From positions 248,001-312,000 of the forward strand of contig NW_025767593.1 in assembly GCF_003918875.1 (NCBI RefSeq): DNA of 64,000 bases, written 5' to 3'. Below, piece after piece: positions 10,201 to 58,280 of the stretch. The notes under the pieces were generated by a model. That model had not been told where the DNA came from, ran no database searches, and saw only the letters and a list, made by a program, of their open reading frames with translations. The position numbers and the translations under genes were made by a program. The stretch is from Haliotis rubra (Eukaryota). Every line of letters starts with the position of its first letter. The stretch's first letter is position 1.

Positions 10201-11649
10201 CTAGCACCAGCCGGGGCTCCAGACACCGTTAAAGTTGACCGGGTTAGATCGAGGGTCAGAAGGTGGATCCATCGCAGGCACCCGAGTCGCATTCTTCAGG
10301 GCCAGCATCTGCAGGAGGAAGTTGACGAGGGTGGGGTTGTCCTTCGAGATGTCATGGTGCTCCGTGGGGTCGGCGCGGATGTTGAAAAGCATGACACTGT
10401 CAGAGGGAGAGTCGTCCATGGCAGAGCCGTCTATGTCAGACCCAGCAGGGGGGTACCACCCTGCGTACCCAGGGTCACCAACGATCAACTTCAGGTCTCC
10501 CCATCTGAGAGCTGCGGCGTAGTGGTCGTCGTAGATGTTGTAGACAAATTCATTCCTTATGCTACTGCCTCCGTTCAGGATCATGTCGACTTGACTCATT
10601 CCGTCGATATCCAGTTTACTGGAGTCTCCCCCAGCTATGTCCAGTAACGTAGGGTACCAGTCCACAGCATGGAACATCCCAGGGTGAGTGTAGCCTCTCT
10701 TCTTCAGCAGAGTCTTACTGTAGACGAAACCGGCTCCTCTGGTTCCTCCCTCCCATAATGTAGTTTTTCCGCCCCTCAGAGGCCAGTTATTACCACCAGC
10801 AAAGGGAAGCCCACCATTGTCTGTTGTAAACACAAGTAGCAGATTGTCCATGAATCCAAGGTCCTCCAGGACGGTGGTGATGTTGTACACAGCATCGTCC
10901 AAAGCACTCACCATACCACTGTAAACCATCCTATCCAAATCATGAATGTGGCTGTAGCGATCGGAATATTTAGCAGGCACCTGCAGGGGTCCATGTACAG
11001 CTTGAAACGGCAGGTACAGATACATGGGCTTGGATTTGTCGTGGTTCATTATGATATCGATGGCTCTCTTTACAAACACGTACGTGGAGTACTCCCCTTG
11101 TGCGTCTTTGTAGACCTCTGTCATGTTTCTGAAGTCATATCCATAGTAATCAGCTAGCTCGTCCCTGACATGAGTGAAATAGTCCTCCATACCTGCATAG
11201 TAGCCCATGAAGGTGTCGAAGCCTCTGTAGGTGGGAGTGTACTTCAAGTTACAGAAGCCGAGGTGCCACTTGCCGACCATGTGGGTATCATAGCCGAGGG
11301 TCTTCAACCTCTGTGGGATGGTGATTATGTCCGCCGGCATGTACTTGGGTTGTTCTATAAAGACTACATTATCCTGGAGCCCCGTGTGGTAGGGGAACTT
11401 GCCCGACATGAAGCAGTTTCTTGAGGGGGAACACAGCGGTAGGACGTAGGAGGAGTTGAGGATGACGCCGTCACGGGCGAGGCGGTCAAGTGTCGGCGTC
11501 TGGATGTCCGGGTTGATCCAGCCGACGTCATTCCAGCCAAGGTCATCTGCCACGATGAAGACGATGTGTGGTTTGTCAGCAGCAGCAACAGTGCTTGTGA
11601 AACACGAGACGACCACAGCAGCGAGAACAGTGTAAAGCGTCATGGCCAT
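10201..11649 (-). CDS. Arylsulfatase B-like sulfatase, copy 1 (482 aa, intronless, signal peptide)
   Basis: Uninterrupted ORF with hydrophobic N-terminus. Contains ADDLG, CSPSR (formylglycine motif), GKWHLG, AVHGPL, TDNGG and RGGK, and the animal ARSB-type C-terminus. Start placed at MAMTL by alignment to the paralogs. Confidence 0.95.
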   Translation of the reverse strand: MAMTLYTVLAAVVVSCFTSTVAAADKPHIVFIVADDLGWNDVGWINPDIQTPTLDRLARDGVILNSSYVLPLCSPSRNCFMSGKFPYHTGLQDNVVFIEQPKYMPADIITIPQRLKTLGYDTHMVGKWHLGFCNLKYTPTYRGFDTFMGYYAGMEDYFTHVRDELADYYGYDFRNMTEVYKDAQGEYSTYVFVKRAIDIIMNHDKSKPMYLYLPFQAVHGPLQVPAKYSDRYSHIHDLDRMVYSGMVSALDDAVYNITTVLEDLGFMDNLLLVFTTDNGGLPFAGGNNWPLRGGKTTLWEGGTRGAGFVYSKTLLKKRGYTHPGMFHAVDWYPTLLDIAGGDSSKLDIDGMSQVDMILNGGSSIRNEFVYNIYDDHYAAALRWGDLKLIVGDPGYAGWYPPAGSDIDGSAMDDSPSDSVMLFNIRADPTEHHDISKDNPTLVNFLLQMLALKNATRVPAMDPPSDPRSNPVNFNGVWSPGWC

Positions 11650-11699
11650 GTAGCAATTGAGGACATGGACCTTCTGCGTTAAGGTCAGTGTGTATCTCA

Positions 11700-11800
11700 C
11701 TCTTATCAGATCACGTGCAAGGCTACGTTCTTATCATGAACCATTTCACACAGACGTCCTATTTCATGTTACTTATTTCAAGTGACGATAAGGTCACCCA
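11700..11800 (-). promoter_or_regulatory. Conserved upstream module of the sulfatase genes (GATA sites, CACGTG E-box, AGGTCA half-site)
   Basis: CTTATCAGATCACGTGCAAGGCTACGTTCTTATCAT. Homologous blocks lie at ~27037-27072, 35171-35193, 39523-39567 and 58369-58421. Confidence 0.55.
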
Positions 11801-11846
11801 GACATACCAATATCTCCCTCTCTCCCCTTCTCTGTGTTTACTGGTA

Positions 11847-12270
11847 TATGATGATGATGATCATAGGATATTTATATAGCGCACATATCCACGCAACTAG
11901 TACATGTTCAAGGTGCTTGAGCGTTCCTTTGATCAAACGATGTCTTTTTTTCTGGAATTTTTTTAACCATCTCAATTGCCTGGTAGGTATTCAGCTTCTG
12001 CACCTTGTTAGGCGCAGCGAGTTATAACACAGCCTCATCCTTACAAGGTACCCATTTGCCGCTGGGTGGACAGGGACACATAGTCACAGTGTTTTGTCCA
12101 ATGATACTGCACGTCACTATACCCACAACTACGTGTCTGCACGTGTGTCCACCATCCACCTACCGTCTGATGAGTGGGTTTTTTTAAGGGTGTGTACTGC
12201 ACTGTAGGTTTTGTGACCACACTGAACGAGCCTGAAAGTAATCTTAGGTCCAAGGTTTTTACACACGACT
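11847..12270 (-). mobile_element. Probable old SINE remnant (Deu-domain-like core)
   Basis: (ATG)n tail at the left end and GGTACCCATTT-x-GCTGGGTGGAC...GTGTTTTGTCCAA core. Family assigned from memory only. Confidence 0.4.
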
Positions 12271-12591
12271 ACAAGTGGGGATCAGTTATGTTTGCGCTAT
12301 ATTAGCGACTAGTCACAACCATATGCTGCCGTCATGAACAAGCTTCACCTTTGTGTACCGCTAAGTACTCTTACGCGAATGCTCGATTCTCTTCATATAT
12401 ATTCATGTTCAATTTTCTTCTTTTTTTTGAGTAATTTTAAGAATGACATTATATGATGAAAAGATTATTAACCTCGTGTATTTCCGTGTCATTAATATCA
12501 TATATTTGGAATAAAAAATATATATAGCTATATATGGCTCGCATAATACAATTTTTATTCCTAATACATGATATTAATGCAACTAATCTCT

Positions 12592-14195
12592 GTATATACA
12601 GTAGCTACACTTTAACAGCAACAGATCCCAGTGTTTATACAGTTGTAACACTTCAACAGGAACAGATACCAGTGTTTATGCACCAGTTATACTGTAACAG
12701 AAAAAGATACCAGTGTTTATACTCTATTAACACTTCAACAGCAACAGATACCGGTGTTTATGCACCAGTTTTAGTTCAACGGCAACAGATACCAGTGTTT
12801 ATACAGTAGCTTCACTTTAACATAAAAATATACCAGTGTTTATACTCTAGTTACACTTCAACGGCAACAGATACCAGTGTTTATGCACCAGTTATACTGT
12901 AACAGAAAAAGATACCAGTGTTTATACTCTATTAACACTTCAACAGCAACAGATACCGGTATTTATGCACCAGTTTTAGTTCAACGGCAAGAGATACCAG
13001 TGTTTATACACTAGTTACACTTCAACAGCAACAGATACCAGTGTTTATACACTAGTTACACTTCAACAGCAACAGATACCAGTGTTTGTACACTAGTTAC
13101 GCTTCAACAGCAACATATACCAGTGTTTATACACTAGTTACACTTCAACAGCAACAGATACCAGTGTTTGTACACTAGTTACGCTTCAACAGCAACATAT
13201 ACCAGTGTTTGTACACTAGTTACACTTCAACAGCAACAGATACCAGTGTTTGTGCACCAGTAATACTTCGACGGCAAGAGATACCAGTGTTTATACACTA
13301 GTTACACTTCAACAGCAACAGATACCAGTATTTATACACTAATTACACTTCAACAGCAACAGATACCAGTGTTTATACAGTAGTTACTCTCCAACGGCAA
13401 GAGATATCAGTGTCTATACACTAGTTACACTTCAACGACAACAGATACCAGTGTTTGTACTCTAGTTACACTTCAACAGCAACAGATACCAGTGTTTATA
13501 CACTAGTTACACTTCAACAGCAACAGATACCAGTGTTTATACACTAGTTACACTTCAACAGCAACAGATACCAGTGTTTGTACACTAGTTACACTTCAAC
13601 AGCAACAGATACCAGTGTTTATACACTAGTTACACTTCAACAGCAACAGATACCGGTGTTTATACACTAGTTACACTTCAACAGCAACGGATACCACTGT
13701 TTATACACTAGTTACACTTCAACAGCAACAGATACCAGTGTTTATACACTAGTTACACTTCAACAGCAAGAGATACCAGTGTTTATACACTAGTTACACT
13801 TCAACAGCAACAGATACCAATGTTTATACACTAGTTACACTTCAACAGCAACAGATACCAATGTTTATACACTAGTTACACTTCAACAGCAACAGATACC
13901 AGTGTTTGTACACTAGTTACACTTCAACAGCAACAGATACAAGTGTTTGTGCACCAGTTATACTTCGACGGCAACAGATACCAGTGTTTATACACTAGTT
14001 ACACTTCAACAGCAACAGATACCAGTATTTTTACACTAATTACACTTCAACAGCAACAGATACCAGTGTTTATACAGTAGTTACTCTTCAACGGCAAGAG
14101 ATACCAGTGTCTATACAGTAGTTACACTTCAACGACAACAGATACCAGTGTTTATATTCTAGTTACACTTCGACAGCAACAGATAACAGTGTTTT
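12592..14195 (+). repeat. Second array of the 41-bp minisatellite (~39 units)
   Basis: Same unit as 2966-6320 and followed by the same right-hand flank. Confidence 0.97.
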
Positions 14196-24060: not shown

Positions 24061-24482
24061 ACTGTTGTTTTACTGAGTCCGCATTTCACGTGCATTCCGT
24101 ACCGTTGCATTGTATATCTCCACAAATGTTAATAAAGCATTCAGAAAAATACTCTGTTTTCTTAATTCACAGAATTATAAGTCTGTGAAGTGGGTGATGC
24201 TTAATTAATTTCCATATGTATATTAACGTCTTGGAATCTAATGGCTGTTAAATGCGTCCCCGTCCCTTAGTAATAACAGACATACGAGTGCCCTGTCCTG
24301 TGACCTGTGTGATGAGGGTGCATGTCAGGCTATTACTGGTGAGTGGGATGGAGTGTTTCACAATACGACTCACTTACCAGTGTGTGAAGCACTCCATTTC
24401 AGTCACCAATAGTAGCCAAACAAGTACCTCCGTGGCAAGAGGCACGGGTCGCACCAAGTAATACGACTCACTTACCAGTGTG

Positions 24483-25003
24483 AAACACGCCATCTCAAAC
24501 ATTGATGCACATGCACTTCCATGACACAGAAACACGCCATCTCAATCATTGATGCACATGCACTTCCATGACACAGAAACACGCCATCTCAATCATTGAT
24601 GCACATGCACTTCCATGACACAGAAACACGCCATCTCAATCATAGATGCACATGCACTTCCATGACACAGAAACACGCCATCTCAATCATTGATGCACAT
24701 GCACTTCCATGACACAGAAACACGCCATCTCAATCATAGATGCACATGCACTTTCATGACACAGAAACACGCCATCTCAATCATTGATGCACATGCACTT
24801 CCATGACACAGAAACACGCCATCTCAATCATAGATGCACATGCACTTCCATGACACAGAAACACGCCATCTCAATCATTGATGCACATGCACTTCCATGA
24901 CACAGAAACACGCCATCTCAATCATTGATGCACATGCACTTCCATGACACAGAAACACGCCATCTCAATCATTGATGCACATGCACTTCCATGACACAGA
25001 ACA
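24483..25003 (+). repeat. 47-bp minisatellite (AAACACGCCATCTCAATCATTGATGCACATGCACTTCCATGACACAG)n, ~11 units
   Basis: Near-perfect direct repeats. Confidence 0.96.
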
Positions 25004-25533
25004 CAGACAGCTCAGTCATACTCAGTTCAGTTCCAAAAAATGGAGTTGTGTTTAGCTTTAAAATCAGTCAACACGATGCATATGCTTGATTACCCTTACG
25101 TTCTTTTGAAAGGGACAGCTAGTTGCGTTATTTCAACCACATTCAAGGCTACAGCCACGGGCCACTTTAAACGTAATCGTTTCCTTTATTTAAACATATT
25201 AACATGATCTGGTCTTTTCCAGCCACAAAATATACGCGAGCACAGAGTCACGAAAATACAGCCACAAACAACATTACAAGTGACCACAGAAGTGATCGTT
25301 TCCTTTATTTAAAATATATTTATCACAATCATTCTGTCAGTGCACTTTCTGTAAAACACATTAAAATGCATGCCGAAAGGTTCATCTACAACTGGGTGTC
25401 CAACATTACCGGATCCTTTTTTCATGCATAAATACATGGGCACGTAAAGTAACATAAATCACACTTGTTTAAACTGGTTACATAACATCGGGATTCGGTG
25501 GCGCGGATGGTCACGTGACTGCATTCAATTATT

Positions 25534-26982
25534 CTAGCACCAGCCAGGACTCCAGGCACCGTTAAAGTTGGCCGGGTTAGATTGAGGATCAGAGGGTGGA
25601 TCCATCGCAGGCACCCGTGTCGCATTCTTCAGGGCCAGCATCTGCAGAAGGAAGTTGACGAGGGTGGGGTTGTCCTTGGATATGTCATGGTGCTCCGTGG
25701 GGTCGGCGCTGATGTTGAAGAGCATGACACTGTCATGGGGAGAGTCGTCCACTACGGAGAAGTCTAAGTCAGAACCAGCAGGGGGGTACCACCCTGCGTA
25801 CCCAGGGTTACCAACGATCAACTTCAGGTCTCCCCATCTGAGAGCTGCGGCGTATTTGTTGTCGTAGATGTTGTAGACAAATTCATTTCTTACGCTGCTG
25901 CCTCCATTCAGGATCATGTCGACTTGACTCATCCCGTCGATATCCAGTTGACTGGAGTCTCCCCCAGCTATGTCCAGTAACGTAGGGTACCAGTCCACGG
26001 CATGGATCATCCCAGGGTGAGTGTAGCCTCTCTTCTTCAGCAGAGTCTTACTGTAGACGAAACCAGCTCCTCGGGTGCCTCCCTCCCATAATGTGCCTTT
26101 CCCACCCCTCAGAGGCCAGTTATTACCACCATCATAGGGTAGACCACCATTGTCTGTTGTAAACACAAGAAGCAGATTGTCCATGAATCCAAGGTCCTCC
26201 AGGACAGTGGTGATGTTGTACACAGCATCGTCCAAAGCACTCACCATCCCACTGTAAACCATCCTATCCAAATCATGAATGTGGCTGTAGCGATCGGAAT
26301 ATTTAGCAGGCACCTGCAGGGGTCCATGTACAGCTTGAAACGGCAGGTACAGATACATGGGCTTGGATTTGTTGTGGTTCATTATGATATCGATGGCTCT
26401 TTTCACATATATGTACATCGAGTATTCCCCTTGTGCGTCTTTGTAGACATCTGTCATGTTCCTGAAGTCAATTCCATAGTAATCAGCAAGCCTGTACCTG
26501 TCATGAGTGAAATAGTCCACCATACCTGCGTAGAAGCCCATGAAGGTGTCGAAGCCTCTGTAGGTGGGAGTGTACTTCCAGTTACAGAAGCCGAGGTGCC
26601 ACTTGCCAACCATGTGGGTATCATAGCCCAACGTCTTCAGCCTCTGTGGGATGGTGATTATGTCCACCGGCATGTACTTGGGCTGCTCTATGAAGACCAC
26701 ACGATCCTGGAGCCCCGTGTGGTAGGGGAACTTGCCCGACATGAAGCAGTTTCTTGAGGGGGAACACAGCGGCTGGACGTAGGAGGAGTTGAGGATGACG
26801 CCGTCACGGGCGAGGCGATCAAGTGTCGGCGTCTGGATGTCCGGGTTGATCCAGCCAACGTCATTCCAGCCAAGGTCATCTGCCACCATGAAGACGATGT
26901 GTGGTTTGTCAGCAGCAACAGCAGTGCTGGTGAAACACGAGACTACTACAGCAGCGAGAACAGCGTAAAGCGTCATGGCCAT
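25534..26982 (-). CDS. Arylsulfatase B-like sulfatase, copy 2 (482 aa, intronless)
   Basis: Intact ORF with the same motifs as copy 1. Candidate AATAAA (minus strand) at 25304-25309. Confidence 0.95.
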   Translation of the reverse strand: MAMTLYAVLAAVVVSCFTSTAVAADKPHIVFMVADDLGWNDVGWINPDIQTPTLDRLARDGVILNSSYVQPLCSPSRNCFMSGKFPYHTGLQDRVVFIEQPKYMPVDIITIPQRLKTLGYDTHMVGKWHLGFCNWKYTPTYRGFDTFMGFYAGMVDYFTHDRYRLADYYGIDFRNMTDVYKDAQGEYSMYIYVKRAIDIIMNHNKSKPMYLYLPFQAVHGPLQVPAKYSDRYSHIHDLDRMVYSGMVSALDDAVYNITTVLEDLGFMDNLLLVFTTDNGGLPYDGGNNWPLRGGKGTLWEGGTRGAGFVYSKTLLKKRGYTHPGMIHAVDWYPTLLDIAGGDSSQLDIDGMSQVDMILNGGSSVRNEFVYNIYDNKYAAALRWGDLKLIVGNPGYAGWYPPAGSDLDFSVVDDSPHDSVMLFNISADPTEHHDISKDNPTLVNFLLQMLALKNATRVPAMDPPSDPQSNPANFNGAWSPGWC

Positions 26983-27290
26983 GAAGCAATCCCTGTATAT
27001 GTAACGAGATTGTAGCTAACGCGAGGACATGTATATCTTATCAGATCACGTGCAAGGCTACATTCTAATCCTGAACAATTTTACATAGACGTCATATTTC
27101 ATGTTAGGTATTTCAAGTATTTCCAGACATACCAATCTTTCTGTCCCTCTCCCAGCTAGAAATGACCTGCACCAATTTGTCATCAATAAAAGGTTCAGGA
27201 ACAGCTCACTTCCGGTTTAACAGTGCGTCGTCGTCAGCGCTGACTAAATATCGCTGAGTGCAACAAACAATAAGTTTGATTATAGGGTTA

Positions 27291-33604: not shown

Positions 33605-35053
33605 CTAGCACCAGCCGGGGCTCCAGGCACCGTTGAAGTTAACCGGGTTAGATCGAGGGTCAGAAGGTGGATCCATCGCAGGCACCCGTGTCCCATTCTT
33701 CAGGGCCAGCATCTGCAGGAGAAAGTTGACGAGGATGGGGTTGTCCTTCGAGATGTCATGGTGCTCCGTGGGGTCAGCACTGATGTTGAACAGCATGACA
33801 CTTGGGAGGGGAGAGTTGTCCATCTCAGGGATGTCTATGTCTGACCCAGCGGGGGGGATCCACCCTGCATGCGAGATGTCACCAACCATCAACTTCAGAT
33901 CTCCCCATCTGAGGGCTGCGGCGTAGTGGTCGTCGTAGATGTTGTAGACAAATTCATTTCTTACGCTGCTGCCTCCGTTCAGGATCATGTCGACTTGACT
34001 CATTCCGTCGATATCCAGTTGACTGGAGTCTCCCCCAGCTATGTCCAGTAACGTAGGGTACCAGTCCACAGCATGGAACATCCCAGGGTGAGTGTAGCCT
34101 CTCTTCTTCAGCAGAGTCTTACTGTAGACGAAACCGGCTCCTCTGGTGCCTCCCTCCCATAATGTTGCTTTCCCGCCCCTTAGAGGCCAGTTATTAGCGC
34201 CATGGCTCGGAGGACCACCATTGTCTGTTGTAAACACGAGAAGCAGATTGTCCATGAATCCAAGGTTCTCCAGGACGGTGGTGATGTTGTACACAGCATC
34301 GTCCAAAGCACTCACCATACCACTATAAACCATCCTATTCAAATCATGAATGTGGCTGTAGCGATCGGAATATTTAGCAGGCACCTGCAGGGGTCCATGT
34401 ACAGCTTGAAACGGCAGGTACAGATACATGGGCTTGGATTTGTCGTGGTTCATTATGATATCGATGGCTCTCTTTACAAACACGTACGTTGAGTACTCCC
34501 CTTGTACGTCTTTGTAGACATCTGTCATGTTCCTGAAGTCATAGCCATAGTAATCAGCCACCTCGTCCCTGACATGAGTGAAATAGTCCTCCATACCTGC
34601 ATAGTAGCCCATGAAGGTGTCGAAGCCTCTGTAGGTGGGAGTGTACTTCCAGTTACAGAAGCCGAGGTGCCACTTGCCAACCATGTGGGTATCATAGCCC
34701 AGGGTCTTCAGCCTCTGTGGGATGGTGATCAGGTCCGCCGGCATGTATTTGGGTTGTTCTATGAAGACTACTTTATCCTGGAGTCCTGTGTGGTAGGGGA
34801 ACTTGCCCGACATGAAGCAGTTTCTTGAGGGGGAACACAGCGGCTGGACGTAGGAGGAGTTGAGGATGACGCCGTCACGGGCGAGGCGATCAAGTGTCGG
34901 CGTCTGGATGTCCGGGTTGATCCAGCCAACGTCATTCCAGCCAAGGTCATCTGCCACGATGAAGATGATGTGTGGTTTGTCAGCAGCAGTGCTAGACTTC
35001 AAACAGGAGGAAAAGGCTAGAAGCGCTAGAACAGCTGAAAACCGCATGGTCAT
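33605..35053 (-). CDS. Arylsulfatase B-like sulfatase, copy 3 (482 aa, intronless, divergent signal peptide)
   Basis: Intact ORF with all catalytic motifs. N-terminus MTMRFSAVLALLAFSSCLKSSTAA differs from the other four. Confidence 0.95.
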   Translation of the reverse strand: MTMRFSAVLALLAFSSCLKSSTAADKPHIIFIVADDLGWNDVGWINPDIQTPTLDRLARDGVILNSSYVQPLCSPSRNCFMSGKFPYHTGLQDKVVFIEQPKYMPADLITIPQRLKTLGYDTHMVGKWHLGFCNWKYTPTYRGFDTFMGYYAGMEDYFTHVRDEVADYYGYDFRNMTDVYKDVQGEYSTYVFVKRAIDIIMNHDKSKPMYLYLPFQAVHGPLQVPAKYSDRYSHIHDLNRMVYSGMVSALDDAVYNITTVLENLGFMDNLLLVFTTDNGGPPSHGANNWPLRGGKATLWEGGTRGAGFVYSKTLLKKRGYTHPGMFHAVDWYPTLLDIAGGDSSQLDIDGMSQVDMILNGGSSVRNEFVYNIYDDHYAAALRWGDLKLMVGDISHAGWIPPAGSDIDIPEMDNSPLPSVMLFNISADPTEHHDISKDNPILVNFLLQMLALKNGTRVPAMDPPSDPRSNPVNFNGAWSPGWC

Positions 35054-37986: not shown

Positions 37987-39435
37987 CTAACACCAGCCGG
38001 GGCTCCAGGCACCGTTGAAGTTGACAGGGTTAGATCGAGGGTCAGAGGGTGGGTCCATCGCAGGCACCCGTGTCGCATTCTTCACGGCAAGCATCTGCAG
38101 AAGGAAGTTGACGAGGTCGGGGTTGTCCTTGGAGATGTCATGGTGCTCCGTAGGGTCGGCGCTGATGTTGTACAACATAACGCTTCCGAGGTGAGAATCG
38201 TCCATGACGGGGACGTCTATGTCTGACCTAGGAGGGGGGTACCATTCTGAGTACCCAGGGTTACCAACGATCAACTTCAGGTCTTCCCATCTGAGAGCTG
38301 CGGCGTAGTAGGCGTCGTAGATGTTGTAGACAAATTCATTTCTTACGCTGCTGCCTCCGTTCAGGATCATGTCGACTTGACTCATTCCGTCGATTTCCAG
38401 TTGACCGGAGTCTCCCCCAGCTATGTCCAGTAACGTAGGGTACCAGTCCACAGCATGGAACATCCCAGGGTGAGTGTAGCCTCTCTTCTTCAGCAGAGTC
38501 TTACTGTAGACGAAACCAGCTCCCCTGGTGCCTCCCTCCCATAATGTGGCTTTCCCACCCCTCAGAGGCCAGTTATTAGCACCAGCAAAGGGAGGACCAC
38601 CATTGTCTGTTGTAAACACAAGAAGCAGATTGTCCATAAAACCAAGGTTCTCCAAGACGGTGGTGATGTTGTACACAGCATCGTCCAAAGAACTCACCAT
38701 ACCACTATAAACCATCCTATTCAAATCATGAATGTGGCTGTAGCGATCGGAATATTTAGCAGGCACCTGCAGGGGTCCATGTACAGCTTGAAACGGCAGG
38801 TATAGATACATGGGCTTGGATTTGTCGTGGTTCATAATGATATCGATGGCTCTTTTCACAAACACGTACGTGGAGTATTCCCCTTGTACGTCTTTGTAGA
38901 CATCTGTCATGTTCCTGAAGTCATAGCCATAGTAATCAGCCACCTTGTCCCTGACATGAGTGAAATGGTCCTCCGTACCTCCATAGTAGCCCATGAAGGT
39001 GTCGAAGCCTCTGTAGGTGGGTGTGTAGTTCCAGTTACAGAAGCCGAGGTGCCACTTGCCAACCATGTGGGTATCATAGCCCAGGGTCTTCAGCCTCTGT
39101 GGGATGGTGATTATGTCCGCCGGCATGTATTTGGGCTGCTCTATGAAGACCACACTATCCTGGAGCCCCGTGTGGTAGGGGAACTTGCCCGACATGAAGC
39201 AGTTTCTTGAGGGGGAACACAGCGGCTGGACGTAGGAGGAGTTGAGGATGACGCCGTCACGGGCTAGGCGGTCAAGTGTCGGCGTCTGGATGTCCGGGTT
39301 GATCCAGCCAACGTCATTCCAGCCAAGGTCATCTGCCACCATGAAGACGATGTGTGGTTTGTCAGCAGCAGCAACAGTGCTGGTGAAACACGAGACTACT
39401 ACAGCAGCGAGAACAGCGTAAAGCGTCATGGCCAT
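37987..39435 (-). CDS. Arylsulfatase B-like sulfatase, copy 4 (482 aa, intronless)
   Basis: Intact ORF. Start placed at MAMTL by alignment. Candidate AATAAA (minus strand) at 37839-37844. Confidence 0.95.
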   Translation of the reverse strand: MAMTLYAVLAAVVVSCFTSTVAAADKPHIVFMVADDLGWNDVGWINPDIQTPTLDRLARDGVILNSSYVQPLCSPSRNCFMSGKFPYHTGLQDSVVFIEQPKYMPADIITIPQRLKTLGYDTHMVGKWHLGFCNWNYTPTYRGFDTFMGYYGGTEDHFTHVRDKVADYYGYDFRNMTDVYKDVQGEYSTYVFVKRAIDIIMNHDKSKPMYLYLPFQAVHGPLQVPAKYSDRYSHIHDLNRMVYSGMVSSLDDAVYNITTVLENLGFMDNLLLVFTTDNGGPPFAGANNWPLRGGKATLWEGGTRGAGFVYSKTLLKKRGYTHPGMFHAVDWYPTLLDIAGGDSGQLEIDGMSQVDMILNGGSSVRNEFVYNIYDAYYAAALRWEDLKLIVGNPGYSEWYPPPRSDIDVPVMDDSHLGSVMLYNISADPTEHHDISKDNPDLVNFLLQMLAVKNATRVPAMDPPSDPRSNPVNFNGAWSPGWC

Positions 39436-39761
39436 GAAGCAATCCCTGTACATGTAACGAGATAGTGGGCATACCTTATGACATTGCATGATCCTTCTGC
39501 GTTGCGGTCAATATATGTCTCACTCTTATCAGATCATGTTACATGTGCAAGGCTTTCTTCTTATCATCATTATGTACTCGAATGAAAGCGCATATATCAA
39601 ATGATTTAAACAATGTGTATATATTCTAAATGATCCATCTATTTTTCCCTTTGCACTAAACAGAGTTGTTTTTGGGAATGGTCAAGACTGTTTTTTATTC
39701 TTCTGCTCGGCCATCTGAGTGAATGTGTCTGATGGTGGATTGAAGTCCTTGACATACATCC

Positions 39762-41665: not shown

Positions 41666-42154
41666 GTATGCATGAAAGTTGGATACCGAATGCATGAAGT
41701 TGGGATATAAGTAATAAAATAAGTTTGTTTGTTATTTAACACTGCACTCAGTAATGTTCCACTTATTAGGTCTGCAAATAATCGAGTTTGTACCAGACAA
41801 TCCAATGGTCAACATCATGAGCATCGACCTACACAGTCTGAATACATATGTGTGAAGTTGGCATAATGTTCATTTATAAAATCCTAAGACACAGCTTCTA
41901 TAACATTTGAAGCAATATCTGGAGCAATAGCAATGTGCAGAGGAATCAACTGGATTGCACTCTAAAACTCCACGCTTAGCAGGAAGTTTCTGATTACCCA
42001 GACTGAAAGGGAGCTTGCCATGTGACCAGTCTCAAATCACATACTTAACACAATCATTTACAATATCATTAGATGAATTATGGATGTTTTTAGACATAAG
42101 TTCACGATGAAGACCTCGAGGTCTAGAACACCTCACAGTAATGATGTCCATCCT

Positions 42155-47305: not shown

Positions 47306-50300
47306 TTACAAATCAGTTAACAAATCTAATTCTCTTAAAAATGCAATAATTAAATGAGAACTAACATTATTAAAAAGATCCTTCATAGTTCGATTTGAAA
47401 TAGTTATCCCTTGTGATGGAATATTCGATGCAGTCAAGCAAGACATGCTTGACCGTGATTCTTTCATCACAAGGGATGCAAAATGGAGGATCTTCTCCTT
47501 TAAGCAAATATTCATGGGTATACCTTGTATGGCCAATGCGACATCGCCGCATAATGACCTCTTCAAATCTGGACTGACAACCCAAGTAAGTGTAACCGAT
47601 ATAGGGTTTTATTGCATGTAATTTATTGATACCTACTTGGGTGTCCCACTTCTTTTGCATCAGATCACGGATGTAAGATCTAATGCAAGCTTTGTAATCA
47701 GAGTATGGGAGCAGAAGTGGTGTCACAGATTTGTTGAGTGCTGCCTTAGCAGCAATATCAGCCATTGTGTTCCCAGAAATGCCAACGTGGCTGGGTAACC
47801 AACAAAAGACGATGTCGCATTGGCCAGTAGCAAGCTCATTATACAATTCAATAATTTCTAACAAAAGTGGATGTTTGCAAGAAAGATTTTTAATAGCCTG
47901 AAGACACGAAAGAGAATCTGAAAAGATGATATATTGTTTATATTTACGGTGTTTATTAATATATTTAAGAGCTGTTAGTATTGCGTTTGCTTCTGCTGTG
48001 AAAATTGAACTGTCATTGGGTAGTCTGGAAGATATTGTTTTGGACCCAATGACAGTGGCACAAGCAACCGCGCCACCATCCTTGATCCATCTGTATATAA
48101 GGATTTATAGGTATTATATTTATTTCTTAATTGACTAAATTCTTGTTTATACTGTAAATCATTAGTTTCGGATTTTTAAATGTGGTTAATGTTAAGTCAA
48201 CGTCTGGCCTCACCAATTGCCAAGGAGGAAGAAAAAAGACGAGAAGGAGATATATTCTCCAGCTCAATGCCGGCAGCAGAAAGGAATGGTTTAATTCTGT
48301 GCCCAAGAGGCGGAACAAGAGAAGGCTTTTTGTTATACAAATCCTCATAAAGAGGAGTGAAGATGCAGTGAAACGCAGGATTAGACTCGTTAGAATATAG
48401 CTTCGTAATATACTGTAATGATAATTTTATACGGCGTTGGGTAAGAGAAGGCTCATCTGCCTCGACGTAGAGACTGTCAACAGGAGATGTTCTGAAGGAC
48501 CCAAGACAAAGTCTCAGACCTTGATGGTGGACTGAATCTAAGAGTTTTAGGTTGCTTTTGCAGGCTCCACCATAAACGATGGAGCCATAATCAAGCTTCG
48601 AGCGGACAAGTGATCTGTAAAGGTGTAGGAGCGTAGCTTGATCCCCTCCCCACCTTGAATTAGACACGACTTTCAATAAATCAAGTGCCTTCAGGCATTT
48701 AGTTTTGAGAGATTTGATATGCGGAAGAAAAGTTAAATGGGAGTCGAAAATGAGACCTAAGAACTTGGCCTCTTTACAACCTTGATGGGAGTGCCATTTA
48801 AAACAGTTCTGGGTCTTTATGTGGTTTATATTTACGGCAGAAATGTATGCAATTAGTTTTGGATTTAGAAAATTTAAAGCCGTTTTCAAGACACCATTTA
48901 TTTATTTTGTTTAAACACAGCTGCAATTGACGTTCAATAGTATGCATATTTTTACCACGACAAGAAATATTAAAATCATCCACAAAAAGTGATCCATCAA
49001 TGGAGTCGTTTAAAACGTTAGCTAAACTGTTAATCTTTATGCTAAATAAAGTGACAGACAAAATACTGCCCTGTGGGACACCCTGATCCTGATTGTAATG
49101 ATCAGACAGGGTTGAACCCACGCGAACTTGAAATTGCCTGTCAGATAAAAACTCGGCTATAAACTGAGGCAAACGGCCCCGTAAACCAAAATCATGTAAA
49201 TCTTTTAAGATGCCGTACTTCCATGTCGTGTCATAAGCTTTTTCTAGGTCGAAAAAGATTGACACTGCATGTTGCTTGTTAATAATGGCATTCTTAACAA
49301 ATGATTCCAGTCGAACTAAATGGTCAATGGTACTGCGATTTTTACGAAAACCACATTGAATATTTGTGATTAAATTATTAGATTCTAGGTACCAAGTTAA
49401 TCTGTTATTGATCATGCGTTCCATGGTCTTGCAAACGCAGCTAGTCAAGGAAATGGGCCTATAATTAGATGGATCGGTATGATCACGTCCAGGTTTGGGT
49501 ATGGGTACAACGATGGCATCACGCCAGGATGAAGGAAAGTTACCAGTTGTCCAAATTTCGTCAAAAATATTCAAAAGTGTCTCTAGACATGATCCAGGTA
49601 AATGTTTTAGGAGTTGATAATGAATACCATCAGCTCCTGTAGCAGTATTATGAGCTTGTTCAAGAGCATTATGAAGCTCATGAATAGAAAAGATTTCGTT
49701 GTAATCTTCCCGTTATCTGAATGAAAATTTATATTTTTCTTCTCCTGCTGTTGTTGGTATTTTTGAAAGTTAGAACATAGTTAGACGAGGATGAATGTTT
49801 CGCAAGTGTTTCACCCAGTTTATTTGCAATATCAGATTTATTAGTTACCAATTGATCTCCAGATTTTAGATGGTGTATGCTGGATTTATTACCCTTACCT
49901 TTAATTTTCTGGATCATGTTCCAAACCTTTGACATCGGCGTTCGTGAATTAATCTTTGAAACATAATTTCGCCAAGATTGGCGTTTATTTTGTTTAAAAG
50001 TACGCCGGGCTTTAGCATTTAAAATTTTAAACTTATTTAAATTATGGACCATTGGATGGCGACGGAAATACTGTTCAGCTTTCTTCCGTGCCTTCCTAGC
50101 TTGTTTGCAATCAGCTGTAAACCATGGTTTACGTATGTGAGGATTTGCAGAGGACTTCGGAATACACTCATCTGCTATCTCATGAAGGTAGTCGGAGAAA
50201 CGTTTAATAGGGTCGGGGACATCAATAAACATATCAGGATTTAGTTGATTACTGCAAAGAGTTTCATAAAGAACCCAGTCAGCTTTAGCAAAATTCCATC

Positions 50301-50986
50301 TTGTTGACGGAGGAACATCAGATGGTGTCACAGATGTTAATATGGTAGGAAAATGGTCACTACCGCATAGGTCATCATGAACTGACCATTCGAATTCACT
50401 CAGCAGATTAGAGTCAAACCACCGACAAATCTAGGCAAGAGTAAGATCCTGTCGCAGGATGTAGATATGTATGAGAACCATCATTTAAAAGGCATAAATC
50501 ATTATTAAGGAACATTTCCTCAAGCAATTTTCCTCTGGTATTGATGGCAGTACTACCCCAGAGAGGGTTATGGCCATTTAAATCTCCCGTGATAACACAG
50601 GGCTTAGGAGCTGGTCATAAAGTGCTTGAAGATCAGACTGTTGAAGTGAATAAGATGGTGGTATATATATAGAACATAATGTGAAAACAATATTTAACGT
50701 TATGCATTATATAGCAACAGCCTGGAGAGGAGTATTTAGCGGAACAGGACTGTGAATGATACCCCGCCTCACCATAACAGACGATCCTCCAGAGGACTTG
50801 TCCCGGAGGAGAAAAACAATGATATGAATCATATTGTCGAGGGTCAAAATTATCATTGTGTTTAAGGAAGGTTTCCTGTAAACAAAATACTGAGGGTTTA
50901 AAATCCTGAATTAATAGTTGGAGATCATTCATGTTTTTCCGAAGTCCTCTACAATTCCATTGTATTATATCAGCAGAGTAGCTCAT
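47306..50986 (-). pseudogene. LINE ORF2 (APE endonuclease, reverse transcriptase, RNase H), split by frameshifts
   Basis: IIQWNCRGL...CLQET; NYRPISLTS; FFDLEKAYD; GVPQGSILS; LFVDD; WLPSHVGISGNTMAD; RCRIGH. Confidence 0.92.
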
Positions 50987-55950: not shown

Positions 55951-56069
55951 AACGGTACACTTGTTCCACCATTGTGGACCTTGGCAGTATAACATCATAA
56001 GTCACGATATGGCTGACATACTGCCGATGTGACTTTACATTTCAACTCACTCACTCAGTACATCATTAC

Positions 56070-56235
56070 GGGGCGGTGGGGTAGCCTAGTGGTGAAAGCG
56101 TTGGCTCGTCACGCCGAAGACCCGGGTTCGATTCCCCACATGGGCACACTGTGTTAAGCCCATTTCTGGTGTCCCCCGCCGTGATATTGCTGGAATATTG
56201 CTAAAAGCGGGGTAAAACTAAACTCAGTCAGTCAG
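56070..56235 (+). mobile_element. tRNA-derived SINE with 15-bp TSD
   Basis: Same family as 16886-17053. TSD TCAGTACATCATTAC at 56055-56069 and 56236-56250. Confidence 0.92.
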
Positions 56236-56834
56236 TCAGTACATCATTACACTGAGTAGTACTGGTTGTCATCACACAGAAGAATCAAGTAACGACCACT
56301 TATATCACAAGAGAGGGGTCAAACAACACACTCCATCTCAATCACCAGTAGTAGCCAGACATGCTCCTGCATTGCACTTGGCACAGGAAGCAGGTTAAAA
56401 TGGATCCCCGCTCTTTTCAAGTTCATTTCCAACAAATTAATTTGCAATTGCATGCAATACAATACATATACCTCTTTGCAAGACTTGATTACTCTTTCGT
56501 ACCTTCGCATATGGACAGGCACTTCAGGTTATTTCAACCACATTCAAGGCTACAGCCACAGACAACTTTGGAAGTGACCTCAGGAATTATCGTTTCCTTT
56601 ATTTAAGTATATAGATCACAATAATTCTATCTGTAAAGCATATTAAAATGAATGCTGAAGTCGTTGAAAGGTTCATCTCCAACTGCGAGTCCTACATAGT
56701 TGGGTCTTTTTTCAGGCATAATAACTATATTTGCGAATATACAGCCACGTAAATCAGACTTAAGTTTGTTACATGACTTAGGGATGTCATCTATCATCGG
56801 ATGGTATGGTAAATAAATATTGCAGTCAAGGAAT

Positions 56835-58280
56835 CTAGCACCATCCGGGACTCCAGGCATCTTTGAAGTTGGCCGGGTTAGATCGAGGGTCTGAGGGTGG
56901 GTCCATCGCAGGAACCCGAGTCCCATTCTTCAGGGCCAGCATCTGCAAGAGGGAGTTGACGAGGGTGGGGTTGTCCTTGGAGATATCATGGTGCTCTGTC
57001 GGGTCGGTGCTGATGTTGAACAGCATAACGCTGGGGAGACGAGAGTCGTCAATGAGGGGGACGTCTAAGTCAGACTCAGGAGGAGGGTACCATCCTGAGT
57101 ACCGACCAGGGTTACCAACGATCAACTTCATGTCTCCCCATCGAAGAGCTGCGGCATGGTGGGCGTCGTAGATGTTGTAGACAAATTCATTCCTTACGCT
57201 GCTGCCTCCATTCAGGATCATGTCGACTTGACTCACCCCGTCGATATCCAGTTGACTGGAGTCTCCTCCAGCTATGTCCAGTAACGTAGGGTACCAGTCC
57301 ACGGCATGGAACATCCCAGGGTGAGTGTAGCCTCTCTTCTTCAGCAGAGTCTTACTGTAGACGAAACCAGCTCCCCTGGTGCCTCCCTCCCATAGTGTGC
57401 CTTTCCCACCCCTCAGAGGCCAGTTATTACCACCTTGAGTTGGAAGCCCACCATTGTCTGTTGTAAATACAAGAAGCAGATTGTCCATGAATCCAAGGTT
57501 CTCCAGGACAGTGGTGATGTTGTACACAGCATCGTCCAAAGAACTCACCATACCACTGTAAACCATCCTATTTAAATCATGAATGTGGCTGTAGCGATCG
57601 GAATATTTAGCAGGCACCTGCAGTGGTCCATGTACAGCTTGAAACGGCAGGTACAGATACATGGGCTTGGATTTGTCGTGGTTCATTATGATATCGATGG
57701 CTCTCTTTGCAAACACGTACGTGGAGTATTCCCCTTGTGCGTCTTTGTAGACATCTGTCATGTTCCTGAAGTCATAGCCGTAGTAGTCAACAAGCCTGTA
57801 CCTGTCATGAGTGAAATGGTCCTCCATACCTCCATAGTAGCCCATGAAGGTGTCGAAACCTCTGTAGGTGGGAGTGTACTTCCAGTTACAGAAGCCGAGG
57901 TGCCACTTGCCAACCATGTGGGTATCATAGCCAAAGGTCTTCAACCTCTGTGGGATGGTGATCAGGTCCGCCGGCATGTACTTGGGTTGTTCAATGAAGA
58001 CTACACTATCCTGGAGCCCCGTGTGGTAGGGGAACTTGCCCGACATGAAGCAGTTTCTTGAGGGGGAACACAGCGGCTGGACGTAGGAGGAGTTGAGGAT
58101 GACGCCGTCACGGGCGAGGCGATCAAGTGTCGGCGTCTGGATGTCTGGGTTGATCCAGCCAACGTCATTCCAGCCAAGGTCATCTGCCACGATGAAGACA
58201 ATGTGTGGTTTGTCAGCAGCAGCAGCAGTGCTGGTGAAACACGAGACTACTACAGCAGCGAGAACAGTGTAAAGGGTCAT
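56835..58280 (-). CDS. Arylsulfatase B-like sulfatase, copy 5 (481 aa, intronless)
   Basis: Intact ORF with all motifs and a one-residue insertion in NPGRYSGW. Candidate AATAAA (minus strand) at 56598-56603. Confidence 0.95.
   Translation of the reverse strand: MTLYTVLAAVVVSCFTSTAAAADKPHIVFIVADDLGWNDVGWINPDIQTPTLDRLARDGVILNSSYVQPLCSPSRNCFMSGKFPYHTGLQDSVVFIEQPKYMPADLITIPQRLKTFGYDTHMVGKWHLGFCNWKYTPTYRGFDTFMGYYGGMEDHFTHDRYRLVDYYGYDFRNMTDVYKDAQGEYSTYVFAKRAIDIIMNHDKSKPMYLYLPFQAVHGPLQVPAKYSDRYSHIHDLNRMVYSGMVSSLDDAVYNITTVLENLGFMDNLLLVFTTDNGGLPTQGGNNWPLRGGKGTLWEGGTRGAGFVYSKTLLKKRGYTHPGMFHAVDWYPTLLDIAGGDSSQLDIDGVSQVDMILNGGSSVRNEFVYNIYDAHHAAALRWGDMKLIVGNPGRYSGWYPPPESDLDVPLIDDSRLPSVMLFNISTDPTEHHDISKDNPTLVNSLLQMLALKNGTRVPAMDPPSDPRSNPANFKDAWSPGWC

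What the first reader, a model, noticed from the sequence alone, without database searches (positions are those of the whole stretch)
10201..58280. Array of five intact, intronless secretory-pathway sulfatases diversified in a few short loops
Seen: five near-identical ORFs, none disrupted, while almost every transposon around them has decayed. Substitutions cluster in short segments (copies 1-5): QD[N/R/K/S/S]VVF; YAGMEDYFTHVRDEL / YAGMVDYFTHDRYRL / YAGMEDYFTHVRDEV / YGGTEDHFTHVRDKV / YGGMEDHFTHDRYRL; DNGG[LPFA/LPYD/PPSH/PPFA/LPTQ]G; GGK[T/G/A/A/G]T; YD[DHY/NKY/DHY/AYY/AHH]; and the loop around GW(Y/I)PP. Many changes swap charge or aromatic character. Known: in formylglycine sulfatases TDNGG supplies metal ligands and RGGK a sulfate-binding lysine, so at least two variable segments adjoin the active site. 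Inference: this is a substrate-diversified repertoire, plausibly for desulfating dietary algal polysaccharides in a grazing mollusc.
Basis: partly seen in the sequence, partly recalled or inferred. Interest (0 to 1): 0.8.

Follow-up and report, generated by a model that had tools for sequence, protein, structure and literature searches.

The report
Abalone sulfatase gene array, concerted evolution
Five intact, intron-free arylsulfatase-B-like genes sit in a row in blacklip abalone DNA; most of each gene is kept alike within the species by copying between copies, while a few short loops keep old, copy-specific sequences that may set what each enzyme desulfates.

Summary
There are five intact single-exon ORFs of 481-482 aa, 88-92% identical, all Pfam Sulfatase with every catalytic residue present. 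The genome is almost certainly Haliotis rubra, and RefSeq already annotates these genes. They form a small subclade (a sixth copy on another contig, at least 13 in H. rufescens) of a family of about 30 single-exon genes. That family probably began as a retrogene, because its nearest non-abalone relatives have 12 or more coding exons. The scan had already noted sister arrays of this family on other pieces of this genome.

dN/dS is below 1 even in the variable segments (0.35-0.91), and only one or two codons show omega above 1.

What the data do show is concerted evolution:
- Outside four hot segments the genes cluster by species (100/100 support).
- Silent divergence between H. rubra copies is twice as high inside the hot segments (p=0.003), while between-species silent divergence is flat.
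- c3 and c6 each share exclusive signature blocks with one H. rufescens gene.
- The c3 loops are conserved across species (omega 0.10).

So the loops are old, maintained, copy-specific islands, not recent diversification. Substrate and tissue remain untested.

The parts
10201..11649 (-). c1: single-exon ARSB-like sulfatase CDS, 482 aa (RefSeq-identical protein P0132)
   Evidence: the start at 11649 is chosen by homology to c2
25534..26982 (-). c2: single-exon ARSB-like sulfatase CDS, 482 aa (P0136). This copy was used for the structure model and for residue numbering.
33605..35053 (-). c3: sulfatase CDS, 482 aa (P0002). It has its own signal peptide and the 'LMVGDIS-HAG' loop shared with H. 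rufescens P0126. Homology to the other copies stops exactly at the stop codon.
37987..39435 (-). c4: sulfatase CDS, 482 aa from the homologous ATG (the RefSeq model P0135 starts further upstream, 488 aa)
56835..58280 (-). c5: sulfatase CDS, 481 aa (P0001)
26983..27118 (-). Conserved proximal promoter and 5'UTR block, about 130 bp, shown here for c2. The equivalent blocks lie at about 11650-11790 (c1), 35054-35193 (c3), 39436-39571 (c4) and 58281-58415 (c5). Each holds one or two TGATAAG (GATA-like) motifs and, in some copies, a TATA-like box near -40. The block is conserved in four of the five H. rufescens genes examined (Rf134, like c6, has a different 5' flank).
25242..25533 (-). Shared 3'UTR of about 300 bp, shown for c2. 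The equivalents are 9902-10200 (c1) and 56551-56834 (c5). An AATAAA lies about 270 nt after the stop, and homology continues beyond it. The 3'UTR is lost in c3 and truncated to about 50 nt in c4.
26470..26535 (-). Hot segment 1 in c2 (residues 150-171, FYAGMVDYFTHDRYRLADYYGI): a hairpin with lower model confidence. In some H. rufescens genes the same place holds a 5-aa deletion variant.
26092..26148 (-). Hot segment 2 in c2 (residues 279-297, GGLPYDGGNNWPLRGGKGT). It lies between the metal ligands D277/N278 and just past K295, and holds codon 283, the only codon flagged for omega above 1 in both site-model runs.
25852..25866 (-). Hot segment 3 in c2 (residues 373-377, YDNKY): a turn between the first two strands of the C-terminal subdomain
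25717..25815 (-). Hot segment 4 in c2 (residues 390-422): a long loop of the C-terminal subdomain with pLDDT 60-73. It holds the trans-species c3/P0126 signature at residues 389-395.

Best explanation
The five ORFs are functional genes for type I (formylglycine-dependent) sulfatases of the arylsulfatase B/I/J kind in the blacklip abalone.

Shown:
- They carry a signal-peptide-like N-terminus, the CSPSR formylglycine motif and all metal, sulfate and acid/base residues, and they fold like human ARSB.
- They are under purifying selection.
- The genome encodes the formylglycine-generating enzyme.

Origin (inferred, moderately strong): the whole abalone single-exon family of about 30 genes in this genome descends from one reverse-transcribed copy of a multi-exon sulfatase gene. 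It then grew by DNA-level tandem duplication that carried a short promoter and 3'UTR along.

Evolution of this subclade (shown statistically for H. rubra, a trend only in H. rufescens): the copies are older than the H. rubra / H. rufescens split. Non-allelic gene conversion keeps about 80% of the coding sequence alike within each species. Four short segments (residues 150-171, 279-297, 373-377 and 390-422), and in c3 and c6 the signal peptide (for c6 also the promoter), escape homogenisation and keep copy-specific sequences. For c3 these are conserved across species at omega about 0.1.

Function (inferred): the islands are the parts that differ in function between copies, most likely in recognising the leaving group (substrate). 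Two of them lie in the C-terminal subdomain, which shapes the pocket in solved S1 sulfatases, and one lies between catalytic residues. The enzymes most likely work in the digestive gland or gut on sulfated glycans. The nearest solved relatives all remove 4-O-sulfate from GalNAc or galactose (ARSB and the S1_19 carrageenan sulfatases).
For: Identity:
- Pfam PF00884 at E about 1e-48.
- Human ARSB 1FSU at E=6e-118.
- AF2 model with pLDDT 93, and Foldseek TM 0.91 to 1fsu_A, then TM 0.77-0.79 to S1_19 carrageenan 4-sulfatases.
- D35, D36, C73, P75, R77, K127, H129, H219, D277, N278 and K295 are invariant in 61 homologs.
- FGE (PF03781) is present in the genome.

Selection: pairwise dN/dS 0.20-0.34; M0 omega 0.21.

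Species: five G000 ORFs are identical to NCBI H. rubra proteins.

Retrogene origin:
- There are about 30 intact single-exon paralogs in the genome.
- The Littorina and chiton relatives have 12 or more coding exons.
- The Patella relative spans 9.3 kb.
- The sister gene P0023 maps exon by exon on C2170.
- These placements come from the tree.

DNA-level duplication: 3' homology continues past the AATAAA, and there is no poly(A) tract.

Concerted evolution:
- In the REST partition the two species are reciprocally monophyletic at 100/100.
- At codons with an unchanged amino acid, within-rubra silent divergence is 0.30 in hot segments against 0.15 elsewhere (p=0.003). Rubra-versus-rufescens silent divergence is flat, 0.37 against 0.375 (p=0.52).
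- Exclusive shared nucleotide states number 9 for c3-P0126 and 13 for c6-P0134, against 0-2 for all other cross-species pairs.
- In hot segments c3-P0126 has dN 0.059 and dS 0.56, whereas c3 against its own species' paralogs has dN 0.18-0.22.
- The same positions are hypervariable among 13 H. rufescens proteins.

Role of the C-terminal subdomain and of leaving-group recognition in S1 specificity: PMC9096561, PMC6923384.

Abalone entrails are a classical commercial source of sulfatase activity (PMC2684592). Fucoidan-degrading activity of abalone hepatopancreas is cited in PMC6315715.

Transcription: a small run (X8) of a closely related organism covers only coding parts of c3 and c4, not the unique spacer, whereas DNA run X4 covers everything.
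Against: - The hot-segment tree mixes species, but the AU test does not reject H. rubra monophyly (p=0.29).
- Sawyer's runs test on silent sites alone is not significant (p=0.37), and PHI is not significant (p=0.21), so no discrete recent conversion tracts were caught.
- The silent-site contrast is only a trend in H. rufescens (ratio 1.44, p=0.09).
- The hot segments were delimited after seeing the amino-acid variation, although the silent-site test used only codons with an unchanged amino acid.
- Paralog-variable sites are the columns that vary family-wide (entropy 2.29 against 1.24 bits), as plain relaxed constraint would also give.
- No coordinates of the model were available, so distance of the hot residues from the pocket was not measured.
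- The kind of run X8 (RNA or DNA) is not on record and its tissue is unknown.
- No enzyme assay exists for these genes.
Confidence: 0.62

Rival explanations
1. One reading: the copies are young duplicates whose substrate-contact loops are being driven apart by positive (diversifying) selection.
For: M2a beats M1a on the whole gene (2dlnL 15.5, p about 4e-4), with codons 283 and 417 at posterior above 0.99. Many of the changes swap charge or aromatic character. The same positions are hypervariable in H. rufescens.
Against: The omega>1 class holds only 0.5% of codons. The test assumes one tree, which the mosaic data violate (49% of informative site pairs are incompatible). With a partition-specific tree and 11 sequences the LRT falls to p=0.06, with one codon flagged. 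dN/dS is 0.35-0.91 in every hot segment. Silent divergence is doubled in the same segments. The c3 loops are conserved across species at omega 0.10.
Confidence: 0.12
2. Neutral reading: each species expanded the gene independently and recently. The variable segments are simply unconstrained surface loops, and the copies are functionally equivalent.
For: Variable sites fall in columns that vary across the whole family. About 20% of codons fit omega=1. The AU test cannot reject species monophyly in the hot segments. The silent-site Sawyer test is not significant.
Against: Uniform between-species silent divergence combined with twofold heterogeneity within H. rubra (p=0.003) is not expected from independent recent expansions. 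There are 9 and 13 exclusive cross-species shared states for c3-P0126 and c6-P0134, including third codon positions. Within the hot segments 75% of codons fit omega 0.13, and c3-P0126 omega is 0.10.
Confidence: 0.13
3. Dosage reading: the array is kept mainly to make more of one enzyme. Gene conversion maintains sameness, and the loop differences are tolerated by-products where conversion is blocked by mismatches.
For: All copies are intact, under purifying selection and share one promoter block. Homogenisation over most of the CDS fits selection for sameness. Divergent stretches are known to block conversion (general knowledge; compare PMC3966223).
Against: The cross-species conservation of the copy-specific c3 loops implies selection on each loop version, not mere tolerance. 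c3 and c6 also keep distinct signal peptides, and c6 a distinct promoter, which suggests differentiated use.
Confidence: 0.13

Closest known systems
Human arylsulfatase B (N-acetylgalactosamine-4-sulfatase, PDB 1FSU) and its paralogs ARSI/ARSJ
   Same: Best solved match by sequence (E=6e-118) and by fold (TM 0.91, 43% identity). It has the same ten active-site residues listed for 1FSU in PMC5159873, the same two-subdomain fold and an N-terminal signal peptide.
   Different: Human ARSB is a single multi-exon lysosomal housekeeping gene (from memory). Here there are 6 (H. rubra) to 13 or more (H. rufescens) single-exon copies in arrays. The loop that carries the C181-C192 disulfide in ARSB (from memory) is 5 residues shorter here. 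The substrate is unknown.
Molluscan ARSB duplications proposed as an adaptation to algal diets (scallop hepatopancreas proteome, PMC5159873)
   Same: The same protein family and the same hypothesis. That paper reports 7 ARSB genes in scallop (4 detected as protein in hepatopancreas), 16 in Aplysia, and divergent C-terminal regions suggested to give different specificities.
   Different: That work did not cover abalone, single-exon genes, tandem-array structure or concerted evolution. The abalone family is much larger.
Bacterial S1_19 carrageenan galactose-4-sulfatases (PfS1_19A/B 6B0J, 6PSM; ZgCgsA 9HH2-4)
   Same: Second-best structural neighbours (TM 0.77-0.79). They have the same S subsite and act on a red-algal polysaccharide that abalone eat. 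Their specificity comes from leaving-group contacts that include C-terminal subdomain residues (PMC6923384, PMC9096561).
   Different: Only 28-29% identical. The residues that contact carrageenan were not mapped onto the abalone proteins, so similarity of substrate is a lead, not a result.
Concerted evolution with islands of divergence that resist gene conversion (for example GOT1 paralogs in Tigriopus, PMC3728101; long-lasting mammalian cases, PMC2720389)
   Same: Paralogs are closer within a species than to their orthologs over most of the gene, with short segments that stay divergent and are read as targets of selection for distinct function.
   Different: Here the pattern lies in a multi-copy tandem array of a secreted/lysosomal hydrolase and spans two loci (c6 is on another contig). 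Discrete conversion tracts were not detected at silent sites.
The larger single-exon sulfatase arrays on contig C1112 of the same genome (earlier scan notes s1-329442, s1-329456)
   Same: Same retrogene-derived abalone family, same tandem head-to-tail layout, and the same kind of variable segments.
   Different: They are only 57-61% identical to the window's genes. The window's subclade sits on a very long stem branch (1.04 changes per site) and has its own promoter block.

Membership tests
Type I (S1) formylglycine-dependent sulfatases (Pfam PF00884) | Significant match to the Sulfatase domain model over its whole length | tested here: met
   All five score 162-167 bits against a cut-off of 25, covering profile positions 1-300 of 301
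Type I (S1) formylglycine-dependent sulfatases (Pfam PF00884) | C-x-P-x-R formylglycine motif | tested here: met
   CSPSR at c2 residues 73-77 is invariant in all five copies and in 61 homologs
Type I (S1) formylglycine-dependent sulfatases (Pfam PF00884) | Metal ligands and sulfate-binding/acid-base residues (ARSB D53, D54, D300, N301, R95, K145, H147, H242, K318) | tested here: met
   c2 D35, D36, D277, N278, R77, K127, H129, H219 and K295 are invariant and align to 1FSU. The residue list comes from PMC5159873, except N301, which is from memory.
Type I (S1) formylglycine-dependent sulfatases (Pfam PF00884) | Two-subdomain alkaline-phosphatase-like fold | tested here: met
   AF2 model with pLDDT 93; TM 0.91 to 1fsu_A; 481 PDB matches at E<=0.001, and all 50 listed are sulfatases
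Type I (S1) formylglycine-dependent sulfatases (Pfam PF00884) | A formylglycine-generating enzyme is available in the same organism | tested here: met
   PF03781 exon-wise matches above cut-off on contigs C2189 and C557
Type I (S1) formylglycine-dependent sulfatases (Pfam PF00884) | Actual formylglycine modification and sulfate-ester hydrolysis | not testable with these tools
   Needs protein chemistry and assays
ARSB/ARSI/ARSJ clade of animal sulfatases | Closest relatives are animal ARSB-like proteins rather than other sulfatase subfamilies or bacterial ones | tested here: met
   The top 120 hits that carry a name are all metazoan, named arylsulfatase B/I/J-like or hypothetical, at 46-84% identity. 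Human ARSB is far ahead of ARSA, GALNS, STS and bacterial chains. The SulfAtlas subfamily number was not checked.
Processed retrogene followed by tandem duplication | All coding introns of the parental gene type are absent | tested here: met
   Uninterrupted ORFs here and in H. rufescens. The Littorina and chiton relatives have 12 or more coding exons. The Patella relative spans 9.3 kb. The sister gene P0023 maps exon by exon on C2170.
Processed retrogene followed by tandem duplication | Single-exon genes form one clade nested among multi-exon genes | tested here: inconclusive
   A 38-row group holds all single-exon abalone genes at SH-aLRT 92, but a multi-exon Patella gene sits in the same unresolved fork. 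This was a quick tree only.
Processed retrogene followed by tandem duplication | Poly(A) remnant and target-site duplication at the copy borders | tested here: not met
   There is no poly(A) tract, and homology runs past the AATAAA. This is expected if the present copies arose by DNA duplication long after the founding event, so it bears on the copies, not on the founder.
Concerted evolution by non-allelic gene conversion | Paralogs within a species are closer than orthologs between species | tested here: met
   In the REST partition both species are monophyletic at 100/100. Mean dS is 0.16 within rubra and 0.24 within rufescens, against 0.54 between species.
Concerted evolution by non-allelic gene conversion | Independent markers show that the paralog lineages predate the species split | tested here: met
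   c3-P0126 share 9 exclusive nucleotide states (loop 389-395 and K94). c6-P0134 share 13 (signal peptide) plus a shared distinct promoter. However, the AU test on all hot segments together is not significant (p=0.29).
Concerted evolution by non-allelic gene conversion | Detectable conversion tracts | tested here: inconclusive
   Runs of identical splits are in excess (17 against 5.1, p<1e-4; mature part 9 against 4.3, p=0.024). Sawyer's test on all sites gives p<2e-4 but on silent sites p=0.37. PHI gives p=0.21.

The most novel reading that the evidence does not exclude
The four loop islands are specificity cassettes that selection protects from homogenising gene conversion. Under this reading the array, together with its sister arrays, encodes the long-used but molecularly undefined 'abalone entrails' sulfatase activity as a set of animal-encoded enzymes with distinct specificities for sulfated algal polysaccharides (carrageenan-type Gal-4-sulfate, fucoidan and others). 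An animal genome would then do a job usually credited to gut bacteria.
Probability: 0.25. Interest if true: 0.7.

Novelty: new member of a known kind. Interest (0 to 1): 0.42.

Why it matters
Sulfate esters block the breakdown of carrageenan, fucoidan, porphyran and ulvan. Almost all characterised algal-polysaccharide sulfatases are bacterial (PMC9096561), and no sequence is tied to the invertebrate fucoidan sulfatase activities known since the 1960s (PMC6315715). The dominant bacteria of the abalone digestive gland carry few sulfatases (PMC5870069). A large host-encoded repertoire would therefore help explain how abalone use seaweed, and would be a source of new desulfating enzymes.

For molecular evolution, the array is a clean natural case in which gene conversion makes old paralogs look young. 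Only the parts that matter for differentiation keep their history. This also warns that 'near-identical copies with a few diversified loops' should not be read as recent diversifying selection without a silent-site control.

Tried and rejected
1. 3D mapping of variable residues against the pocket was not possible. The model's coordinates are not exposed to the scripts, and the papers read give only a few contact residues for distant S1_19 enzymes. I used sequence adjacency, secondary structure and pLDDT instead. Loop enrichment was not significant (odds ratio 1.5, p=0.11).
2. Mutation-rate heterogeneity as the cause of the hot segments is rejected, because between-species silent divergence is flat.
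3. Bacterial horizontal transfer as the cause of intronlessness is rejected. The nearest relatives are animal genes at 50-60% identity, while bacterial structures are at 28-29%.
4. Independent retroposition of each copy is rejected. The copies share a promoter block and 3' flank beyond the poly(A) signal, and there is no poly(A) tract.
5. The whole-gene M2a result, taken as proof of positive selection, is set aside. It rests on 2 codons and a single tree in mosaic data, and the partitioned re-run gives p=0.06.
6. Expression by tissue could not be settled.
7. Literature searches found no abalone genome paper mentioning sulfatase expansion and nothing on abalone arylsulfatase expression in digestive gland.
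8. The 297-aa ORF at 40912-41805 is an artefact of an 18-bp tandem repeat and has no Pfam hit.

Full report
OBSERVATION

The window holds five uninterrupted minus-strand ORFs at 10201-11700, 25534-26982, 33605-35053, 37987-39489 and 56835-58280. Their products are 88-92% identical. tblastn with one copy finds exactly these five places and no fragments. The long versions of c1 and c4 are in-frame upstream extensions. By homology the starts are at 11649 and 39435, giving 481-482 aa for all copies.

All five match Pfam Sulfatase PF00884 end to end at E about 1e-48. Among the six H. rubra copies, 81 of the 458 mature-protein positions vary. They are clustered: the index of dispersion is 1.65 against 0.81 in permutations, p<2e-4.

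Self-comparison of the window shows that the copies share only the CDS, about 130 bp upstream and up to about 330 bp downstream. The spacers are unrelated, rich in satellites, and contain one decayed retroelement.

WHAT THE GENES ARE

- The best solved relative is human arylsulfatase B (1FSU, E=6e-118). After it come bacterial S1_19, S1_16 and related carrageenan sulfatases.
- An AlphaFold2 model built on 61 homologs has mean pLDDT 93. It superposes on 1fsu_A with TM 0.91, and on S1_19 galactose-4-sulfatases with TM 0.77-0.79.
- D35, D36, C73, P75, R77, K127, H129, H219, D277, N278 and K295 (c2 numbering) are invariant across all 61 sequences. They correspond to the active-site residues listed for 1FSU in PMC5159873.
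- The N-terminal 22-24 residues are hydrophobic, helical in the model and poorly conserved, as expected of a signal peptide. No signal-peptide predictor was run.
- The genome encodes a formylglycine-generating enzyme.

WHOSE GENOME, AND HOW BIG THE FAMILY IS

The word search returns only metazoan ARSB/I/J-like proteins, led by Haliotis. Five ORFs from another contig of this assembly are identical to NCBI proteins of Haliotis rubra. The assembly has 1.378 Gb in 2855 contigs. The five window proteins and a sixth on contig C595 are exact members of RefSeq-derived clusters, so they are already annotated.

Six-frame search of the genome finds the five copies, the sixth close copy (89%), about 25 more intact single-exon paralogs at 57-61% identity in arrays on C1112, C2414 and C1391, and many multi-exon sulfatase genes. 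Earlier notes of this scan describe the C1112 arrays. I reached the species and the retrogene idea independently, and they agree.

WHY THERE ARE NO INTRONS

The nearest non-abalone relatives are split into at least 12 coding exons (Littorina, 57% identical, and a chiton, 53%). A Patella relative spans 9.3 kb. The sister of the single-exon group in the tree, H. rubra P0023, maps exon by exon on contig C2170. Loss of all introns at once is the mark of a processed retrogene.

The present copies, however, share a promoter block and 3' flank that run past the AATAAA, with no poly(A) tract. They therefore arose by DNA-level duplication after the founding event. Monophyly of the single-exon genes has support 92 on a quick tree, with one multi-exon Patella gene unresolved in the same fork. 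A single founding event is therefore the most parsimonious reading, not a proven one. H. rufescens genes of this subclade are also single-exon and lie in a same-strand array at 245-354 kb of one scaffold.

SELECTION

Pairwise Nei-Gojobori values among the six H. rubra copies are dN 0.04-0.07, dS 0.15-0.30 and dN/dS 0.20-0.34.

My own codon-likelihood fits on seven sequences gave the following:

| Model | Result |
|---|---|
| M0 | omega 0.21 |
| M1a | 80% of codons at omega 0.04, 20% at omega 1 |
| M2a | adds a class of 0.5% of codons at omega about 25 |
| M1a vs M2a | 2dlnL 15.5, p about 4e-4 |

The M2a class consists of two codons: 283 in the DNGGxPxx loop and 417 in a low-confidence loop. 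That test assumes one tree, and the tree is poorly resolved (bootstraps 46-83). Of the informative site pairs, 49% are incompatible.

I re-ran the test on 11 sequences with separate trees for the hot segments and for the rest. The hot segments give p=0.06 with only codon 283 flagged, and the rest gives nothing. Within the hot segments 75% of codons fit omega 0.13.

The variable positions are those that vary across the whole family (entropy 2.29 against 1.24 bits, p=3e-14). The +-10-residue neighbourhoods of catalytic residues are depleted of variation (odds ratio 0.38, p=0.003); the exceptions are 281-286 and 296. Positive selection is therefore at best a minor part of the story.

THE MAIN RESULT: CONCERTED EVOLUTION WITH ISLANDS

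Silent divergence is not uniform along the gene. Using only codons whose amino acid is the same in all copies, the silent-site results are as follows:

| Comparison | Hot segments | Rest | Ratio | Permutation p |
|---|---|---|---|---|
| Within H. rubra (six copies) | 0.30-0.315 | 0.15 | 2.0-2.1 | 0.001-0.003 |
| H. rubra vs H. rufescens | 0.366 | 0.375 | 0.98 | 0.52 |
| Within H. rufescens (5 genes) | 0.271 | 0.188 | 1.44 | 0.09 |

A partition-free window test within H. rubra gives p=0.013. Because the between-species values are flat, mutation rate does not differ between the segments; what differs is the age of the paralog differences.

H. rufescens has at least 13 proteins of this subclade. 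With five of their coding sequences added, the 1137 nt outside the hot segments split cleanly by species (100/100). The 237 nt of hot segments give a tree that mixes species, although the AU test does not reject H. rubra monophyly (p=0.29).

Two lineages are clearly older than the species split:
- c3 shares 9 exclusive nucleotide states with H. rufescens P0126. Eight of them lie in codons 389-395, the 'LMVG[D/E]IS-HAG' signature, and they include third positions.
- c6 shares 13 exclusive states with P0134. Twelve lie in the signal peptide, and the two genes also share a distinct promoter.
- All other cross-species pairs share 0-2.

Even so, outside the hot segments c3 and c6 are dS 0.11-0.21 from their species-mates and 0.45-0.58 from those orthologs. 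The bulk of each gene has therefore been overwritten by copies from the same species, including between two contigs.

Within the hot segments, c3 against P0126 has dN 0.059 and dS 0.56 (omega 0.10). c3 against its own species' paralogs has dN 0.18-0.22. The loops are therefore not free to drift: each version is conserved, and the versions differ between copies.

Discrete recent tracts were not caught at silent sites (Sawyer p=0.37, PHI p=0.21), although runs of identical splits are in excess. This fits many short, old exchanges better than a few long recent ones.

The pattern of divergence islands persisting against conversion, read as regions under selection for distinct function, is a known one (PMC3728101, PMC2720389).

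LIKELY FUNCTION

All of this section is inference.

- In solved S1 sulfatases the catalytic residues do not discriminate substrates. Recognition of the leaving group does, with key contacts from the C-terminal subdomain (PMC9096561, PMC6923384).
- Two islands (373-377 and 390-422) lie in that subdomain. One (279-297) lies between the metal ligands and the sulfate-binding lysine. One (150-171) is a hairpin with lower model confidence.
- The nearest solved enzymes all remove 4-O-sulfate from GalNAc or galactose.
- Abalone entrails are a commercial sulfatase source (PMC2684592), and abalone hepatopancreas degrades fucoidan (reference 18 in PMC6315715).
- The dominant bacteria of the abalone digestive gland have few sulfatases (PMC5870069).
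- A scallop study found ARSB proteins in hepatopancreas and proposed the diet-adaptation idea (PMC5159873).
- The promoter block, conserved between the two species, holds paired TGATAAG motifs. The background rate is 0.2 per 200 bp. GATA factors drive gut expression in many animals (general knowledge). This is a lead only.

Transcription evidence is weak. In a small run of a closely related organism, contigs cover coding parts of c3 and c4 and a high-copy repeat, but none of the unique spacer. A DNA run of the same organism covers all of it. The kind of that small run and its tissue are not on record.

VERDICT

The family assignment and the host guess are right. The proposed mechanism (recent loop diversification under positive selection) is not what the sequences show.

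The array is an old, annotated member of a large abalone-specific, retrogene-derived sulfatase family. It evolves in concert except at a few conserved, copy-specific islands. By kind it is a new member of a known kind. The evolutionary pattern and the link to algal-polysaccharide digestion make it moderately interesting and directly testable.

Noticed in passing
window 2965-6316 and 12591-14194: The same 41-bp satellite (unit TTCAACAGCAACAGATACCAGTGTTTATACACTAGTTACAC; about 80 and 39 copies) lies on both sides of c1, with strongly negative GC skew.
   Followed up: no
window 62392-63993: A 22-bp satellite (AGGATATAGCTGAGATACTTGA, about 73 copies) with GC skew +0.42 runs to the window's end.
   Followed up: no
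window 40912-41805: The 297-aa ORF here is an artefact of an 18-bp tandem repeat (AAAGAGAAGCTGACACAC, 40 copies) and has no Pfam match.
   Followed up: yes
window 47370-50331 (minus strand): A decayed retroelement lies between c4 and c5: a reverse-transcriptase ORF at 48798-49574 (PF00078, E=1e-36), a weak RNase H remnant at 47370-47864, and neighbouring ORFs in other frames without matches.
   Followed up: partly
window 36441-36636: A short element between c3 and c4 is extremely high-copy in a DNA run of a related organism (summed word depth about 50,000 against about 59 for flanking unique DNA). It also appears in the small RNA-like runs, so it is probably an abundant, transcribed SINE-like repeat.
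   Followed up: no
window 33605 (3' end of c3): Homology of c3 to all other copies ends exactly at its stop codon. A contig of run X8 that matches the c3 coding end continues instead into the canonical 3'UTR seen in c1/c2. So either this genome's c3 lost its 3'UTR to a rearrangement or insertion, or the contig comes from another copy.
   Followed up: partly
upstream of each copy, e.g. window 27040-27118, 39500-39571, 58345-58415; L031, L035, L036, L038: Paired TGATAAG (GATA-like) motifs about 35 bp apart, and a GGTATATATA box near -44, are conserved in the promoter block between H. rubra and H. rufescens. c6 and H. rufescens P0134 share a different promoter.
   Followed up: partly
H. rufescens proteins P0121, P0122, P0125, P0128, P0131: These paralogs carry a 5-residue deletion in the 150-171 hairpin (THEENN-----NYD) and a 1-residue deletion in the loop after DNGG. 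The same hot segments therefore also vary by indels in the sister species.
   Followed up: no
G000 contig C2170:625000-736500: A multi-exon sulfatase array is the closest multi-exon kin (66-67% identical) of the single-exon family, and so is the likely home of the retrogene's parent.
   Followed up: partly
window 24482-25001 and 27291-27884: Minisatellites of 47 bp (98% matches) and 28/56 bp flank c2 closely on both sides.
   Followed up: no
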